DNA of 63,911 nucleotides, filler included, from Octopus bimaculoides (lineage: Eukaryota), in the NCBI RefSeq assembly GCF_001194135.2. It is 6 parts of 6 records of this genome, joined end to end, with 100 filler letters (N's around TTAATTAATTAA, not from the genome) between each part and the next. Parts side by side here need not be neighbours in the genome. Positions count along the whole stretch, not along the records: positions 25,280 to 38,282 come from NC_069005.1; 5 more parts are not named here. One strand, given 5' to 3'. The translations under genes were made by a program, and so were the position numbers. The notes below the pieces were generated by a model. The model saw nothing but the letters and a program-made list of their open reading frames with translations, searched no databases and was not told the origin of the DNA. Of this stretch, positions 27,450-36,308 are shown piece after piece (the first letter of the stretch is position 1; every line of letters starts with the position of its first letter).

Positions 27450-28580
27450 GCAGCTTTGTCAAAGAGACGAGGTGTCGAAAAACGTGTCTCACAAACGGCG
27501 ACCACACTTTCTCCTCGTCAAGAAAATTCTGGAGCTATCGTAACCTCAGTCTATTGTTTACCACGTTATGTCCAGTTCCCCACGCGGTGGATGTTGACAG
27601 CAAATAGAGCGTCTGACCAGTGTAACATGCTTGCCTCACCCACAAAGCGGAATAGCAAGCTTTCTTGTGTGGTCAGCCATGAAATGGAACAAGTCGCCAA
27701 GTCACGACGGTAAGGCCGTAGTAGATGATGGATACAATGTAGGTGTTGGCCACTTCAACCCGACCCTTTGGAATAGCTTCTTCTTGACCCATTTTGACCC
27801 ATTTCCTGGTGAGACTGGCCACTTAACTTGTCCCAGTCGTTATCCAAATGGAGGTCCGGACCAAACCAGGCGCAAAGCAGTCTAACCGGTCCGCCTGTCC
27901 AACTGTCATGCAGCATTGATCTTCCCCACCGCCTTCCCCTTGTTTTTTCCTCTCCTCTCACTGCTTCGTACTTCTTCATTGCTGCACCGATTACCTCGAT
28001 GTGTTTGGTGTCCGATAATATAACAGCAACGTTGTCCACGTATGCTGACGCGTCTCTTCGGCATCTTAATTCTCGCAGGATGCCCTTCGAAACTTCTAAC
28101 TTCCGCAGTAGGGATTCTAAAGTCAGCACAATACGCCAAGAATTAGGAAAAGGGAGCATTCATGACGGACTGAACGCATGATACTAGACGGTTTCCACGG
28201 GTTGGCATTTACTCCGATCACTAAGCAAATGTCAGTGGACCTTTCAACGATCTTACTTCTTAAAATCGAGACCGAAACCAATCACTTTCGGGACAATCGT
28301 CAAGTATTAACGATCGACCCTATCGAAAGCTTTCGATAGACATAAATTGATCAGAACCCCATCCATGCCAGATTCTTTACCAAACCTTTCTATGATTTAT
28401 CGTATGAGGTGGAGGTTGTCATGGATAGACCAGTTTGGGGATGACACGTGTTTGCGCATCACAACTAAGACAGAGGAGTTCGTGTTTGTGGCACAAAATC
28501 AAAGCCTTCAAGGGGCCACAAGAGGCAAGTATTGAAGCAGAATCGCATAAGAAACTTCAGTGTTGAGGTTGAGCATGAAT
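27450..28580 (-). mobile_element. Degenerate Tx1/L1-clade non-LTR retrotransposon reverse transcriptase
   Basis: Frameshifted RT motifs in order: IPNWSIHDNLHLIR*II, GVLINLCLSKAFDR, SVRHECSP (SVRQGCP-like), LESLLRKL, SAYVDNV (YADD-like), LCAWFGPDL. Contains stops and frameshifts. Confidence 0.85.
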
Positions 28581-29722: not shown

Positions 29723-30045
29723 TTTTTTTAAACAAACCCTAGAAAGGATCGTATTCTGGGGTTTGCCAAGTCACACAGACAGAAAGACGAAGGCGAATCA
29801 CTGCCGAAGTGTTTAGAAGCGAAAATAGCAAAGCCAGCGCCTTGTAGGGGTTTCAGAGAATAACAATAGTAAGGATAACAATGACAGCCGTCACTCGCGA
29901 GCGAGAACGCTTGGTGTCTTCAATGAAGGCTTCCTATGAAGGTGAACAACAAGAACATTAAGAATAACAGGCCCCCAATCCCCGAAAAAGCACACACACA
30001 CACACGCATATACACATACACACAAGAAACAGCACAAATACGGGT

Positions 30046-30505
30046 TGAGAGAGAAAGGGAGAGAGAGAGTAGAAAAATTAGAGAGTAGAGACAGACAGAC
30101 AGACAGACACAGAGAGAGACAGATAGAGAGAGAGACAGACAGACAGAGCAGAAGGAGAAAGAACAAAATGGACAGAGAGAGAGAGAGGCAGAGAGAGAGA
30201 GAGAGACAGAGAGGGAGAGGGAAAAAGAAAGAGAGAGAGGGAAAGGGAAAAAGAAAGAGAGAAGACAGAAAGCAGAAAGAAGAGAGAAAGAGAGAGACAG
30301 ACAGACAGAGAGAGGGAGAGAGGGAGAGGGAGAGGGAAAAAGAAAGGGAGAAGACAGAAAGCAGAAAGAAGAGAGGGAGTGAGAGAGAGAGAGAGAGAGA
30401 GAAAGAGAACAGAGAGAGAAAGAGAACAGAGAGAGAAAGAGAACAGAGAGAGAGAGAGAGGGAGAGGGAGAGGGAAAAAGAAAGAGAGGACAGAAAGCAG
30501 AAAGA

Positions 30506-30537
<32 letters not shown>

Positions 30538-30563
30538 CAGAGAGAGAGAGAGAGAGAGAGAAC

Positions 30564-30598
<35 letters not shown>

Positions 30599-30800
30599 CA
30601 ACAGAGAGAGAGAGAGACAACAGAGAGAGAGAGAGACAGCTGAGAGAGACAGCTGAGAGAGAGAGAATTCTGAGAGAGAGAGAGAGACAGACAGATGAGA
30701 GAGAAAGAGAGAGACAGACTGCTGTGAGAGCGGGAGACAAACATACAGAGAAAAGAAGCAGCGGGAAAGAAAAGAGAGTGTGAAAGCAGAGATAGAGAGA
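30046..30800. repeat. About 750-bp GA-rich purine tract (degenerate GA microsatellite with higher-order units)
   Basis: Almost no T on the plus strand over most of the tract. Recurring units GAGGGAAAAAGAAAG, GAAGACAGAAAGCAGAAAGAAGAG, GAGAACAGAG. Confidence 0.9.
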
Positions 30801-31490
30801 GAGAGAGAGAGAAATGAGTGAAAGAGAAAGTGAGAAGGTAAAGACAGGTAGATGCAGAGNNNNNNNNNNAGAGAGAAATGAGTGAAAGAGAAAGTGAGAA
30901 GGTAAAGACAGGTAGATGCAGAGAGAGAGAGAGAGATTCCGGTGTAAGTTGCCACATGATTCGCACATAAACATCGTTAAGTTAGGAAATGAACAAGAAG
31001 ACGTTACTAAACGATAACAACGATCGAAATAACACGCCAGCCGTGACTAATCCAGCACACCGGTATTGAATTAAGCAGAGAGAGAGACAACAACTGTCTG
31101 TTATATTGAAATAGTCTTGATTAAACCAGACAAAACAGATATACAAATGGCTATAAACGACTATATAGTAAGTAATTAACTTTATTTAATTGACTTATAA
31201 CACTAATATATATATATATATGTGTGTGTGTGTATATTGAGAGAGAGAGAGAGAGATTGCACACCTACACACATAGGGAAAAAGTCTTCTGTTTATAATT
31301 CCTTATAAATCTCTTATGCATTACAGAAGTGTGTTATTAATATGCCAAGAACGAAAAGCTAATGTCGAAAGAGTAAAAGGAAAAAATCACTACAGTACTT
31401 GACTGGTATTTGATTTTAGCGTACCTTTCCACCTGCTTAGATGATTAAAAGATAAGGTTTGACCTCGGCGGGATTTCCAAATACAATACA

Positions 31491-33679: not shown

Positions 33680-34462
33680 AGGCATGAAATTTTGGAAGGA
33701 GGGAGGCTGGTCGATTACATCGAACCCCAGTGTTTCACTGGTACTTATTACATTGACACTCAAAAGATGAAAGGCAATGTTGAACTCAGAACGTAAAAAA
33801 GAAATGCCGTTATGGGTTTTTGTCCAGCCAGCTAACAATTCTGTCGGCTTGTCACCATAATAATAATAATAATAATAATAATCCTTTCTACTGTAGACAC
33901 AAGGCCTGAAATTTTCGTAATGGTGGGGAGAGGAGGCTAGTCTATTACATCGACCCCGAAAGGATGAAAGGCAAAGTCGACCTCGGCAGGGTTTGAACTC
34001 TGAAAGTAGCGACGAGCGAAATACCGTTAAGCATTTCGTCCAGCGAATAATAATAATAATAATAATAATAATCCTTTCTACTAGAAGCACAAGGCCTCAA
34101 ATTTGGGGGAAGGGATTAGTTCGATTTACATCGACTCCAGTGCGTAACTGGTACTAATTTTATCGACCTCCGAAAGGATGGAAGGTAAAGTCGACCGCGG
34201 CGGAATTTGAACTCGGAATCTAGCGACGGGCGAAATACCGCTAAGCATTTCGTCCAGCGAATAATAATAATGATGATGAGTTCAGATTTTGCCCACAAGG
34301 CCAGTATTTTCGGGAACGACATCAGTCGATTACATCGACCCTAGTGTGTAACTGGTACTTAATTTATTAACCCTGAAAGGATGAAAGGCAAAATCGACCT
34401 CGGCGGAATTTGAACTCAGAACGTAAGGACAGGCAAAATGCTAAGCGTTTCGTCCAACGAAT

Positions 34463-34497
<35 letters not shown>

Positions 34498-34710
34498 TAA
34501 CAATGACGATAAGTTTAAATTTTGGCACAAGGCCTACAATTTCGGGGAAGGTCATGAGTCAATTACATTCGACGCCAGTATTCAAGTGGTACGTATTTTA
34601 TCGACCCCCGAAAAGACGAATGGTAACATCGGCCTCGGCAGAAATTTGAACTTAGGACTTAAAGAGCTGGAATAAATACCACTAGGCATTTCGCCTAATG
34701 CGCTAAAAAT
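33680..34710 (-). mobile_element. Head-to-tail array of about 5 tRNA-derived SINEs, family B, separated by (TAA)n
   Basis: Repeated unit TCGATTACATCGACCCCAG...GAAAGGATGAAAGGCAAAGTCGACCTCGGCGGAATTTGAACTC...TAAGCATTTCGTCCAGCG. B box GAGTTCAAATTCC on the minus strand. Confidence 0.85.
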
Positions 34711-35572: not shown

Positions 35573-35603
<31 letters not shown>

Positions 35604-35629
35604 TCGCTTGAAGCATTGTGTATTGTTTG

Positions 35630-35860
35630 TAAAGAATAAAAGTTTAGAATGGTACAACAATGCACTATAAAACAAAAAATGGACTATATACCTGTTGTAA
35701 TTTGGTTATCTATAGTCCGATGATATTTCGGAATTACAATTCCTTCTTCAGATCTTCTTAGCTGGAGACTCCAGATATAGATAACCAAATTACAACAGGT
35801 ATATAGTCCATTTTTTGTTTTATAGTGCATTGTTGTACCATTCTAAACTTTTATTCTTTA
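35630..35860. repeat. Perfect 85-bp inverted repeat (35630-35714 / 35776-35860) around a 61-bp spacer
   Basis: Arms read by eye as exact reverse complements. The spacer carries the intact hammerhead. Confidence 0.92.
35719..35754 (-). ncRNA. Minimal type I hammerhead ribozyme, intact core
   Basis: Minus strand GAU CUGAAGA A GGAAUU-GU-AAUUCC GAAA UAU C^ AUC. All core positions present, 6-bp stem II, 3-bp stem I, palindromic stem III AUAU, AUC cleavage triplet (cut between 35722 and 35721). Confidence 0.75.
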
Positions 35861-36308
35861 TATATATATATANNNNNNNNNNNNNNNNNNNNNNNNNNNN
35901 NNNNNNNNNNNNNNNNNNNNNNNNNNNNNNNNNNNNNNNNNNNNNNNNNNNNNNNNNNNATATATATGATATAAATATATATATATATATATATATATCG
36001 CTTTGTAAAGGCACATGGCTTAGTGGTTAAGGTGTTGCACTCACGGTTGTGAGATCGTAGGTTCGATTCCCAGACCAGGCGTTGCATTGTGTTCTTGAGC
36101 AAACCACTTCGTTTCACATTGCTCTGCGATCATTTTGACATGTGACAAATGGCACTCGTTGCACCTGTACAGGTAATGTCAATTTGATGGCAGGAGTAAG
36201 CTTATGTCTACACAAACATTTGATCACTATAAACAAATCATCTTTGTGGTTGTTCAGTAAGAACTATGTCAAACCCTTATATGTCATCTAACGATAGGAG
36301 AGACCATC

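What the first reader, a model, noticed from the sequence alone, without database searches (positions are those of the whole stretch)
35630..35860. Intact minimal hammerhead ribozyme nested in a perfect 85-bp inverted repeat
Seen: the minus strand reads GAU-CUGAAGA-A-GGAAUUGUAAUUCC-GAAA-UAU-C^AUC. It has a complete core (C3 U4 G5 A6 G8 A9 G12 A13 A14, A15.1-U16.1, C17), perfect stems I and II, and a self-complementary AUAU stem III. It occupies the 61-bp spacer of an exact 85-bp inverted repeat, with no coding sequence and (TA)n nearby on both sides. Known: Penelope-like elements and retrozymes carry minimal type I hammerheads with palindromic stem III that cleave as dimers, and PLE insertions often show a 5'-truncated inverted copy of the terminal repeat. 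Inference: a young (arms identical), non-autonomous ribozyme-bearing retro-unit of about 230 bp that may self-cleave in tandem or trans form.
Basis: partly seen in the sequence, partly recalled or inferred. Interest (0 to 1): 0.85.

Follow-up and report, generated by a model that had tools for sequence, protein, structure and literature searches.

The report
Truncated Penelope-like retroelement insertion with hammerhead
This is most likely a dead, heavily shortened insertion of a Penelope-like retrotransposon in a (TA)n microsatellite, laid down as two inverted copies, one of which keeps the small hammerhead ribozyme motif typical of these elements; it is a tidy but ordinary example of a known kind.

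Summary
An exact 85-nt inverted repeat (35630-35714 / 35776-35860) encloses a 61-nt spacer. The minus strand of the spacer carries a complete hammerhead core (35754->35719, predicted cut 35722|35721). Chance is unlikely: about 1e-4 such motifs are expected in the 13-kb piece under a relaxed descriptor, and far fewer under a strict one.

The motif shows three published hallmarks of Penelope-like-element (PLE) minimal hammerheads: an extra nucleotide between A9 and G10.1, a G10.1-C11.1 pair, and a palindromic 15.2-16.2.

The surroundings match PLE insertion anatomy:
- Two inverted, 5'-truncated copies with their 3' ends facing outward.
- A 31-nt one-sided "tail" (35599-35629).
- (TA)n on both sides.
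- An element end 92 nt downstream of the cut site, against 85-92 nt in the one PLE studied in vitro.

I read it as a single dead-on-arrival PLE insertion, not a 230-bp autonomous-looking "retro-unit". There is one hammerhead, no tandem copy, no RT/GIY-YIG ORF in the piece, and no other copy in any collection I could search.

Caveats: Rfam hammerhead models do not score it, helix I is only 3 bp, folding does not favour the active form, and an assembly gap lies 12 nt away. The kind is known; interest is low to moderate.

The parts
35574..35598 (.). Left (TA)n tract: left half of the microsatellite target
   Evidence: 25-nt TA tract. TA tracts make up only 2.07% of the non-N bases of the piece.
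35599..35629 (-). One-sided 31-nt 'tail' at the 3' end of copy A. RNA sense: CAAACAAUACACAAUGCUUCAAGCGAACUAG. Its first 14 nt are 13/14 A or C. The boundary with (TA)n is uncertain by about 4 nt.
   Evidence: It is unique sequence, not part of the inverted repeat and with no counterpart on the right side. It matches the 30-40 bp PLE tail that is often present at one end only (PMC8557442; PMC11167929).
35630..35714 (-). Arm 1: the 85 nt of copy A that lie between +8 and +92 from the predicted ribozyme cut
   Evidence: arm of I1, 100% complementary to arm 2.
35715..35775 (-). Spacer: the extra 61 nt of the longer copy A. It holds a small hairpin (CUGGA-GUC-UCCAG) followed by the hammerhead. Copy A is 5'-truncated at 35775.
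35719..35754 (-). 36-nt minimal type I hammerhead motif: GAU CUGAAGA A GGAAU-UGUA-AUUCC GAA AUAU C AUC
   Evidence: Read directly. Sole descriptor hit in the piece. Chance expectation. PLE min-HHR hallmarks in PMC4209133.
35721..35722 (-). Predicted scissile bond, 3' of C17 (35722) and 5' of A1.1 (35721)
   Evidence: Inferred from hammerhead numbering applied to the sequence. Not tested.
35776..35860 (+). Arm 2: copy B, an 85-nt inverted and more severely 5'-truncated copy. It has no tail and abuts (TA)n directly. Its 5' end corresponds to +8 from the predicted cut site.
35861..35998 (.). Right half of the (TA)n target. It is interrupted by an 87-N assembly gap (35873-35959), and (TA)n resumes after the gap up to 35998.

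Best explanation
This is the footprint of one insertion of a canonical, hammerhead-bearing, endonuclease-positive Penelope-like element (PLE) into a (TA)n microsatellite.

Proposed sequence of events:
1. The PLE endonuclease cut both strands of the AT-rich target.
2. Each DNA end primed reverse transcription of element RNA near its 3' region.
3. One cDNA began at the distal start site, so it carries the 31-nt tail. It ran 177 nt, past the hammerhead, and became copy A (minus strand, 35775->35599).
4. The other cDNA began at the proximal start site, so it has no tail. It stopped after 85 nt and became copy B (plus strand, 35776->35860).
5. The two 5'-truncated ends were joined head to head.

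This gives an exact 85-bp inverted repeat whose 'spacer' is simply the extra 61 nt of the longer copy. The hammerhead is the element's own minimal type I ribozyme. In full elements it sits in the pseudo-LTR about 90 nt upstream of the reverse-transcription start, and it is thought to cut multimeric transcripts as a dimer, probably helped by protein. Here it is a solitary relic with no partner and no ORF, so the locus is most likely inert. If transcribed, it would mainly form an 85-bp double-stranded hairpin.

Shown: the sequence anatomy and that the motif is not a chance match. Inferred: PLE origin, the priming mechanism and any ribozyme activity.
For: (1) The motif is real. All core positions are present. 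It is the only descriptor hit in the 13 kb. The relaxed descriptor gives 1 hit per 200 Mb of Markov sequence and the strict descriptors give 0. My analytic estimate for the PLE-type version is about 2e-12 per position.

[quoted passage not shown] The same paper reports short helix I in PLE ribozymes (4-5 bp, and 2 bp in D. virilis) and a small palindromic helix III in fly, rotifer, shrimp and mosquito PLEs.

(3) The PLE insertion anatomy in PMC8557442 is high 5' truncation, an adjacent inverted 5'-truncated copy forming inverted repeats, a 30-40 bp tail often at one end only, the HHR near the 3' end, and (TA)n as preferred target. All of these are seen here. TA tracts are only 2.07% of the piece.

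(4) In vitro, the Anolis PLE PAc cleaves and extends both DNA strands. It starts reverse transcription at two adjacent internal sites whose interval is the tail. The main start is in an AC-rich stem-loop at +111-118, with the HHR cut at +26, so 85-92 nt downstream of the cut (PMC11167929). Here the tail-less end is 92 nt downstream of the predicted cut, the other end is 31 nt further, and the tail opens with CAAACAAUACACAA.

(5) The right arm ends 12 nt inside the contig. It continues as (TA)n rather than as the mirror image of the left flank, which argues against a simple fold-back assembly artefact.

(6) The host looks like an arthropod, probably a crustacean: the neighbouring Tc1 fragment's best named relatives are Oratosquilla, Trinorchestia and Parasteatoda. 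PLE hammerheads are known in such taxa.
Against: - No Rfam hammerhead model reports the motif, at gathering score or at E<=10, even in an 81-nt search. I could not run a known PLE min-HHR as a positive control.
- Helix I is only 3 bp and helix II only 5 bp, against the published PLE norm of 6-8 bp for helix II.
- In silico, the hammerhead secondary structure (-9.0 kcal/mol) is not the MFE (-10.6). Helix I pairs have 2-3% probability. The spacer is no more stable than shuffles (z = 0.02). The predicted dimer is dominated by an intermolecular duplex of the helix II palindrome (-24.2 against -5.6 for a double hammerhead).
- There is no RT or GIY-YIG coding remnant in the 13-kb piece.
- No second copy exists anywhere I could look, so repetitiveness, homology to a PLE consensus and covariation are all untested.
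- The 85-92 nt spacing and the two-start-site model come from one vertebrate PLE.
- The scaffold is a draft with a gap 12 nt from the repeat.
Confidence: 0.75

Rival explanations
1. One reading: the ~230-bp inverted-repeat unit is itself a young, mobile, non-autonomous ribozyme-bearing retroelement (retrozyme-like or mini-PLE). It would be propagated in trans by a PLE and would self-cleave in tandem or as a trans dimer.
For: Copy A retains the region from 54 nt upstream to 123 nt downstream of the cut. In PAc, the RNA segment from about the cut site to +172 is what the protein needs as template. Animal retrozymes have been proposed to be non-autonomous derivatives of PLE pseudo-LTRs (bioRxiv 10.64898/2026.07.22.740005). 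The arms are identical.
Against: There is no tandem or direct repeat and no second hammerhead. No other copy was found. A unit that contains its own inverted copy is not what a retrotranscribed RNA unit looks like. The asymmetry, with a tail on one side only, is explained by a single insertion event without invoking a new element.
Confidence: 0.1
2. The hammerhead and one arm are genuine PLE sequence, but the exact inverted repeat is an assembly artefact of a short-read draft. It would be a fold-back or mis-join at a contig end next to a palindromic (TA)n tract.
For: The repeat ends 12 nt from an 87-N gap, and the scaffold has four gaps in 13 kb. (TA)n is its own reverse complement and confuses assemblers. 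PMC8557442 notes that PLE tandem/inverted structures cause problems in short-read assemblies.
Against: A fold-back would mirror the left flank to the contig end. Instead, the right arm stops after exactly 85 nt and continues as (TA)n, while the left arm is preceded by 31 nt of unique sequence. The spacer contains no (TA)n and no sequencing adapter or linker that I recognise (from memory, not tested).
Confidence: 0.08
3. It is a DNA-transposon-derived MITE or foldback element (Tc1/mariner-type, TA target duplication) with long terminal inverted repeats. The hammerhead-like motif in its loop is fortuitous. A transcript would act only as a hairpin-RNA or small-RNA precursor.
For: The repeat is bounded by TA on both sides (35630-31 and 35859-60), which is compatible with a TA duplication. 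A Tc1-like element lies in the same piece. Rfam scores the locus only as a generic long miRNA-type hairpin (MIR8562 62.6 bits, mir-9 35.4 bits, all far below gathering).
Against: A motif expected about 1e-4 times or less in the piece would have to sit there by accident and would also have to show the three PLE-specific hallmarks. TA at the ends is weak evidence in 70% A+T sequence beside (TA)n. This reading explains neither the one-sided 31-nt tail nor the 92-nt spacing. No other copy was found.
Confidence: 0.05
4. The hammerhead motif is a pure chance match in unrelated AT-rich non-coding DNA.
For: There is no Rfam hit. Helices I and III are weak. The core plus helix II pattern alone occurs by chance in bacterial genes (15 hits).
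Against: Those chance hits lack helix I and the palindromic helix III. The full descriptor gives about 1 hit per 200 Mb of random sequence. The motif sits in a context with four independent PLE features.
Confidence: 0.02

Closest known systems
Minimal hammerhead ribozymes of metazoan Penelope-like elements (min-HHR; Cervera & de la Pena 2014, PMC4209133)
   Same: Type I topology. CUGANGA and GAAA boxes. An unpaired nucleotide between A9 and G10.1. A G10.1-C11.1 pair. Helix III reduced to the palindrome A15.1-U15.2-A16.2-U16.1, so it is usable only as a dimer. Short helix I. Found as a single motif in a truncated copy, as are most genomic min-HHRs.
   Different: Helix II is 5 bp rather than the usual 6-8 bp. 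Helix I is 3 bp, which lies between the 2 bp of D. virilis and the usual 4-5 bp. No family alignment is available, so covariation is unknown. Activity is untested.
PLE insertion architecture: Penelope/Poseidon, Neptune, Nematis, Naiad (PMC8557442); PAc in vitro (PMC11167929)
   Same: Strong 5' truncation. An adjacent inverted 5'-truncated copy. A 30-40 bp tail at one end only. (TA)n or AT-rich target. The element end lies about 90 nt downstream of the hammerhead cut. The start of the tail is AC-rich.
   Different: Both copies are extremely short (177 and 85 nt). There is no ORF, no pseudo-LTR tandem and no sequence homology to a named PLE that I could test. Clade assignment is impossible.
Metazoan non-LTR retrozymes (Cervera & de la Pena 2020, PMC7229834)
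   Same: Small non-coding unit with a type I hammerhead that has a short palindromic helix III. Proposed PLE ancestry.
   Different: Retrozymes are head-to-tail tandem repeats, each with a hammerhead. According, canonical metazoan type I hammerheads have a 6-bp helix I and loop-loop contacts. Here there is a single minimal motif inside an inverted repeat, not a direct one.
L1 twin priming / inversion-with-truncation insertions
   Same: Two cDNAs primed from the two ends of one target break and joined head to head.
   Different: In L1 twin priming (from my own knowledge) the two segments come from different, non-overlapping parts of the RNA. Here both start in the same 3' region, which produces a true inverted repeat, as expected when the reverse transcriptase starts at a fixed internal site.

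Membership tests
Hammerhead ribozyme (catalytic motif) | Conserved core: C3 U4 G5 A6 N7 G8 A9, G12 A13 A14, A15.1-U16.1, H17 | tested here: met
   Read directly: CUGAAGA ... GAA A..U C.
Hammerhead ribozyme (catalytic motif) | Three helices around the core | tested here: inconclusive
   Helix II is 5 bp with about 60% pair probability. Helix I is only 3 bp with 2-3% probability. Helix III is impossible in a monomer and is 4 A-U pairs in a dimer. The hammerhead fold scores -9.0 against an MFE of -10.6 kcal/mol.
Hammerhead ribozyme (catalytic motif) | Match to curated covariance models (Rfam hammerhead families) | tested here: not met
   No hammerhead family was reported at gathering score or at E<=10 in 13-kb, 274-nt and 81-nt searches. 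No positive control with a known min-HHR was possible.
Hammerhead ribozyme (catalytic motif) | Mg2+-dependent self-cleavage 3' of position 17 | not testable with these tools
   This needs in vitro transcription of monomer and dimer constructs.
PLE minimal hammerhead (min-HHR) | [quoted passage not shown] | tested here: met
   A at 35744. Criterion from PMC4209133.
PLE minimal hammerhead (min-HHR) | Conserved G10.1-C11.1 pair | tested here: met
   G at 35743 pairs with C at 35730.
PLE minimal hammerhead (min-HHR) | Palindromic 15.2-16.2 / minimal helix III | tested here: met
   A-UA-U at 35726-35723.
PLE minimal hammerhead (min-HHR) | Belongs to a genomic consensus family with covariation and compensatory changes | not testable with these tools
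   The source genome is not available. There are no copies in the piece, no translated homologues, and only chance matches in metagenome, prokaryote and viral collections.
Penelope-like element insertion | 5'-truncated copy with an adjacent inverted 5'-truncated copy | tested here: met
   Copy A is 35775->35599 (minus strand) and copy B is 35776->35860 (plus strand). They are joined head to head with their 3' ends facing outward. Criterion from PMC8557442.
Penelope-like element insertion | 30-40 bp tail, often at one end only | tested here: met
   31 nt (27-31 given the ambiguous boundary) at 35599-35629 on the left side only.
Penelope-like element insertion | Insertion into (TA)n or AT-rich target | tested here: met
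   (TA)n abuts both ends. TA tracts are 2.07% of the piece.
Penelope-like element insertion | ORF encoding a telomerase-like RT plus a GIY-YIG endonuclease, or sequence homology to such an element | tested here: not met
   No RT or GIY-YIG Pfam hit in the long ORFs or stop-to-stop frames of the piece. This is expected for a 177-nt truncated copy, but it means membership rests on anatomy and the ribozyme type only.
Metazoan non-LTR retrozyme | Head-to-tail tandem repeats of 150-400 nt, each with a hammerhead | tested here: not met
   There are no direct repeats other than (TA)n, no second copy and no second hammerhead even with a very relaxed descriptor.
MITE (Tc1/mariner-type) | Terminal inverted repeats flanked by a TA duplication, with many dispersed copies | tested here: inconclusive
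   The inverted repeats and terminal TA are compatible. Copy number is untestable. There is no other copy in the piece.
miRNA precursors (mir-9, MIR8562 and others) | Score at or above the family gathering threshold | tested here: not met
   62.6 bits against 211, 35.4 against 58.6, 27.9 against 100. The scores come from the perfect hairpin.

The most novel reading that the evidence does not exclude
The hairpin-plus-hammerhead unit could be more than an insertion scar. It could be a propagating mini-PLE, a non-autonomous element made of the RT-recognition 3' module and the ribozyme. Alternatively, its 85-bp perfect hairpin transcript could be a source of small RNAs that silence the parent PLE family. 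A related hint: the shorter copy ends 7 nt from the predicted cut site, which could mean it was templated on ribozyme-cleaved RNA. That would be rare in vivo evidence that PLE hammerheads cut.
Probability: 0.06. Interest if true: 0.6.

Novelty: new member of a known kind. Interest (0 to 1): 0.25.

Why it matters
PLE hammerheads occur in thousands of copies in many animal genomes, so one more copy is not news. The locus has modest value as a clean natural footprint. Its exact inverted twin copies, one-sided 31-nt tail, (TA)n target and 92-nt distance from cut site to element end are what the recent in vitro model for a lizard PLE predicts: both strands primed, with two internal reverse-transcription start sites. 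Here they appear in what looks like an arthropod genome. If the family can be recovered from the source genome, loci like this could be used to map reverse-transcription start sites. They could also be used to ask whether truncation points cluster at the ribozyme cut, which bears on the open question of whether these ribozymes act in vivo.

Tried and rejected
- **Rfam.** No hammerhead family at any threshold. The only hits were generic long-hairpin miRNA models far below gathering, which I rejected as artefacts of the perfect repeat.
- **Other copies in the piece.** blastn with word size 7 found only the self match and (TA)n. Strict and very relaxed hammerhead descriptors, including the U3-A8 variant, found no partner motif.
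- **Copies by translation.** The 52-aa frame across the element has no homologue in the 5.8-billion-protein collection.
- **DNA pattern scans.** There were 10 hits in metagenome contigs and 5 in prokaryote genomes. All lack flank similarity. Several read as in-frame coding sequence for a D-D/E-G-I-G-I-P-K motif, which I recognise from memory as a histidine-kinase motif. Three viral scans were empty.
- **Fetching the same genome.** I used relatives of the neighbouring Tc1 fragment as a route. The ENA contigs L001 and L017-L019 share only the Tc1 element, at 71-78% identity, so they come from other species. L001's contig length of 38338 equals the window length by coincidence.
- **RT/GIY-YIG search.** Pfam scans of the long ORFs and stop-to-stop frames of the piece found none.
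- **Supplements.** Neither key paper has supplementary files held as text. Lunse et al. 2017 is not held.
- **Snap-back (self-primed) second-strand synthesis as the origin of the repeat.** Rejected, because the second arm would then run through the tail into the target flank.
- **Sequencing adapter or linker in the spacer.** From memory, the spacer does not match the common Illumina, Nextera, 454 or PacBio adapters. This was not tested with a tool.

Full report

Yes. The repeat finder reports arms 35630-35714 and 35776-35860, 85 nt, 100% complementary, with 61 nt between them. The reverse complement of 35719-35754 reads GAUCUGAAGAAGGAAUUGUAAUUCCGAAAUAUCAUC.

In hammerhead numbering on the minus strand:
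- Helix I 5' strand GAU: 35754-35752.
- C3 U4 G5 A6 A7 G8 A9: 35751-35745.
- One extra A: 35744.
- Helix II GGAAU/AUUCC with loop UGUA: 35743-35730.
- G12 A13 A14: 35729-35727.
- A15.1 U15.2 A16.2 U16.1: 35726-35723.
- C17: 35722.
- Helix I 3' strand AUC: 35721-35719.

Three qualifications apply. Helix I is only 3 bp and cannot be extended. Helix II is 5 bp, because a 6-bp version would leave a 2-nt loop. Helix III exists only if two molecules pair through AUAU.

An 87-N assembly gap starts 12 nt to the right of the repeat (35873-35959). There are 31 nt of unique sequence (35599-35629) between the left (TA)n and the left arm, with no counterpart on the right.

**2. Is it more than chance?**

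I wrote a descriptor in the spirit of the published min-HHR descriptor. It requires helix I of at least 3 bp, CUGANGA, 0-1 extra nt, helix II of at least 4 bp with a loop of 3-8 nt, GAAA, a palindrome of 0-6 nt, U, H, and the helix I 3' strand.

It finds one hit in the 13-kb piece on both strands, and that hit is this motif. A much looser version, which also allows the U3-A8 core variant, adds nothing credible.

In 200 Mb of order-1 Markov sequence with the piece's composition, the relaxed descriptor gives 1 hit. That corresponds to about 1.3e-4 expected in the piece and about 20 per 2-Gb genome. Versions requiring Watson-Crick helices with helix II of at least 5 bp give 0 hits. My analytic estimates are about 1e-10 per position for that version and about 2e-12 for the version that also demands the extra nucleotide, G10.1-C11.1 and a palindromic helix III.

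The core plus helix II alone is not rare. The pattern CTGANGANGGAATNNNNATTCCGAAA has 15 matches in metagenome and prokaryote collections. These lack helix I and the palindromic helix III and share no flanks with the window. Several read as coding sequence for a DDGIGIPK-like motif.

**3. What kind of hammerhead is it?**

Rfam 15 reports no hammerhead family at gathering score. It reports none at E<=10 in 274-nt and 81-nt searches either. The only hits are long-hairpin miRNA models far below threshold, driven by the perfect repeat.

I could not run a positive control, so I treat this as a real negative of uncertain weight. Those models expect a closed helix III and a longer helix I.

The literature is more informative. 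Cervera & de la Pena (PMC4209133) describe minimal hammerheads in the pseudo-LTRs of Penelope-like elements. These have a short helix I (4-5 bp, and 2 bp in D. virilis), a long helix II and no closed helix III.

They list features that were not in their descriptor but emerged consistently:
- a conserved G10.1-C11.1 pair;
- a palindromic 15.2-16.2;
- families with covariation.

The candidate has the first three. The fourth cannot be tested here.

The same paper notes that most such motifs occur singly in truncated PLEs. Dual motifs on opposite strands 100-700 bp apart occur. Shrimps, flies, rotifers and mosquitoes carry variants with a small palindromic helix III. In vitro activity is low even as dimers.

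**4. What is the inverted repeat?**

Craig et al. (PMC8557442) summarise PLE insertion anatomy:
- strong 5' truncation;
- often an inverted 5'-truncated copy immediately adjacent, which forms inverted repeats;
- a 30-40 bp 'tail' often at one end only;
- hammerheads near the 3' ends, within pseudo-LTRs;
- (TA)n as the preferred target;
- resulting trouble for short-read assemblies.

Frangieh et al. (PMC11167929) showed the following for the Anolis element PAc:
- The protein cleaves and extends both DNA strands.
- Reverse transcription starts at two adjacent internal sites, and the interval between them is the tail.
- The main start lies in an AC-rich stem-loop at +111-118, while the hammerhead cut is at +26. 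The start is therefore 85-92 nt downstream of the cut.
- Ribozyme cleavage needs protein and is dispensable for insertion in vitro.

The window fits this point by point. Copy A on the minus strand runs from 35775 to 35599 (177 nt). It contains the hammerhead, then 92 nt from the cut to 35630, then a 31-nt tail that opens with CAAACAAUACACAA (13 of 14 bases are A or C), and then (TA)n. Copy B on the plus strand runs from 35776 to 35860 (85 nt), has no tail, and abuts (TA)n directly.

Both 3' ends point outward and the two truncated 5' ends meet at 35775|35776. TA tracts occupy only 2.07% of the piece, yet they flank both ends.

The 'spacer' is simply the part of the longer copy that the shorter one lacks. 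The identity of the arms follows from one event copying one element. It limits the age of the insertion but does not show activity.

**5. Mechanism, and what is inferred**

Shown: the sequence anatomy and that the motif is not a chance match.

Inferred: the element was a canonical EN+ PLE; both strands of a (TA)n target were cut and used as primers; the two cDNAs started at the distal and proximal start sites; and their truncated ends were ligated.

Any ribozyme activity is also inferred. Folding does not favour it:
- The hammerhead secondary structure scores -9.0 kcal/mol against an MFE of -10.6.
- Helix I pairs have 2-3% probability.
- The spacer is no more stable than shuffles (z = 0.02).
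- Two copies prefer an intermolecular duplex of the helix II palindrome, at -24.2 against -5.6 kcal/mol for a double hammerhead.

With a single motif and no partner within 13 kb, this locus is most likely inert. A transcript would mainly form an 85-bp perfect hairpin.

**6. Rivals**

The asymmetry is explained without it. Confidence 0.10.
- *Assembly artefact of the repeat.* The nearby gap and the draft quality count for it. Against it, the right arm stops after exactly 85 nt and continues as (TA)n instead of mirroring the left flank to the contig end. Confidence 0.08.
- *MITE with TA duplication and a fortuitous motif.* The terminal TA is compatible, but this needs a coincidence of about 1e-4 or less and explains neither the tail nor the 92-nt spacing. 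Confidence 0.05.
- *Pure chance.* Confidence 0.02.

**7. What could not be done**

The source genome is not in any collection I could query.
- There is no copy in the piece.
- The element's longest frame has no translated homologue.
- Metagenome, prokaryote and viral scans gave only chance matches or nothing.
- ENA contigs reached through the neighbouring Tc1 fragment are from other species: they share only Tc1, at 71-78% identity.
- There is no RT or GIY-YIG remnant in the piece.

PLE membership therefore rests on the ribozyme subtype plus four anatomical features, not on homology.

**8. Verdict**

The best reading is a dead-on-arrival PLE insertion (confidence 0.75). It is a new member of a known kind and of low to moderate interest. 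It is a neat natural footprint of the dual-strand, two-start-site model, with one small hint worth following: the shorter copy ends 7 nt from the predicted cut site.

Noticed in passing
window 35776 (5' end of copy B) relative to the cut site 35722|35721: The shorter inverted copy begins at +8 from the predicted ribozyme cut. It therefore stops 7 nt short of where a cDNA made on hammerhead-cleaved RNA would end. This could be coincidence, or a trace of in vivo cleavage followed by end trimming.
   Followed up: no
window 35690-35714 and 35776-35800: The inner ends of the arms contain UUUGGUUAUCUA. In one search this aligns to the conserved UUuGGUuaucUA block of Rfam's mir-9 model, and from memory it matches positions 3-14 of mature mir-9. 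Rfam mir-9 scores 35.4 bits against a gathering score of 58.6. The seed differs, so I take it as chance.
   Followed up: partly
window 25281-25595 (-): N-terminal helix-turn-helix part of a Tc1/mariner-type transposase (HTH_23, HTH_28), cut by the edge of the piece. The best named relatives are in Oratosquilla oratoria, Trinorchestia longiramus and Parasteatoda tepidariorum, which suggests an arthropod, probably crustacean, host.
   Followed up: partly
window 36000-36100: A tRNA-like head immediately after the right (TA)n. It has a box A-like TGGCTTAGTGG (36016-36026) and a box B-like GGTTCGATTCC (36060-36070), which suggests a tRNA-derived SINE. ARAGORN finds no tRNA and Rfam gives no tRNA hit.
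   Followed up: partly
window 33850-34650: Three successive diverged copies (70-91% identity) of a repeat of about 205-215 bp that carries an (ATA)n microsatellite. Nature unknown; it could be a SINE/MITE-like or satellite unit.
   Followed up: no
window 29890-30970: About 1 kb of (GA)n-dominated low-complexity sequence with extreme strand skew (GC skew up to 0.73, AT skew up to 0.91). It produces spurious long ORFs. The whole piece is microsatellite-rich: TA, CA, GA and ATA repeats.
   Followed up: no
window 27758-28159 (-): A 134-aa frame containing ...SAYVDNVAVILSD... and ...VRLLCAWFGPDLHL... resembles, by eye, the C-terminal part of a non-LTR (LINE) reverse transcriptase. It has no Pfam hit at E<=0.01. 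It is not PLE-like in any way I could show.
   Followed up: partly
locus L001 (ENA ERZ21867824 ctg86646l): This unrelated contig has exactly the window's length, 38338 bp. It shares no sequence with the piece at megablast level, and with blastn only the Tc1 element at 75% identity. The matching length is a coincidence.
   Followed up: yes
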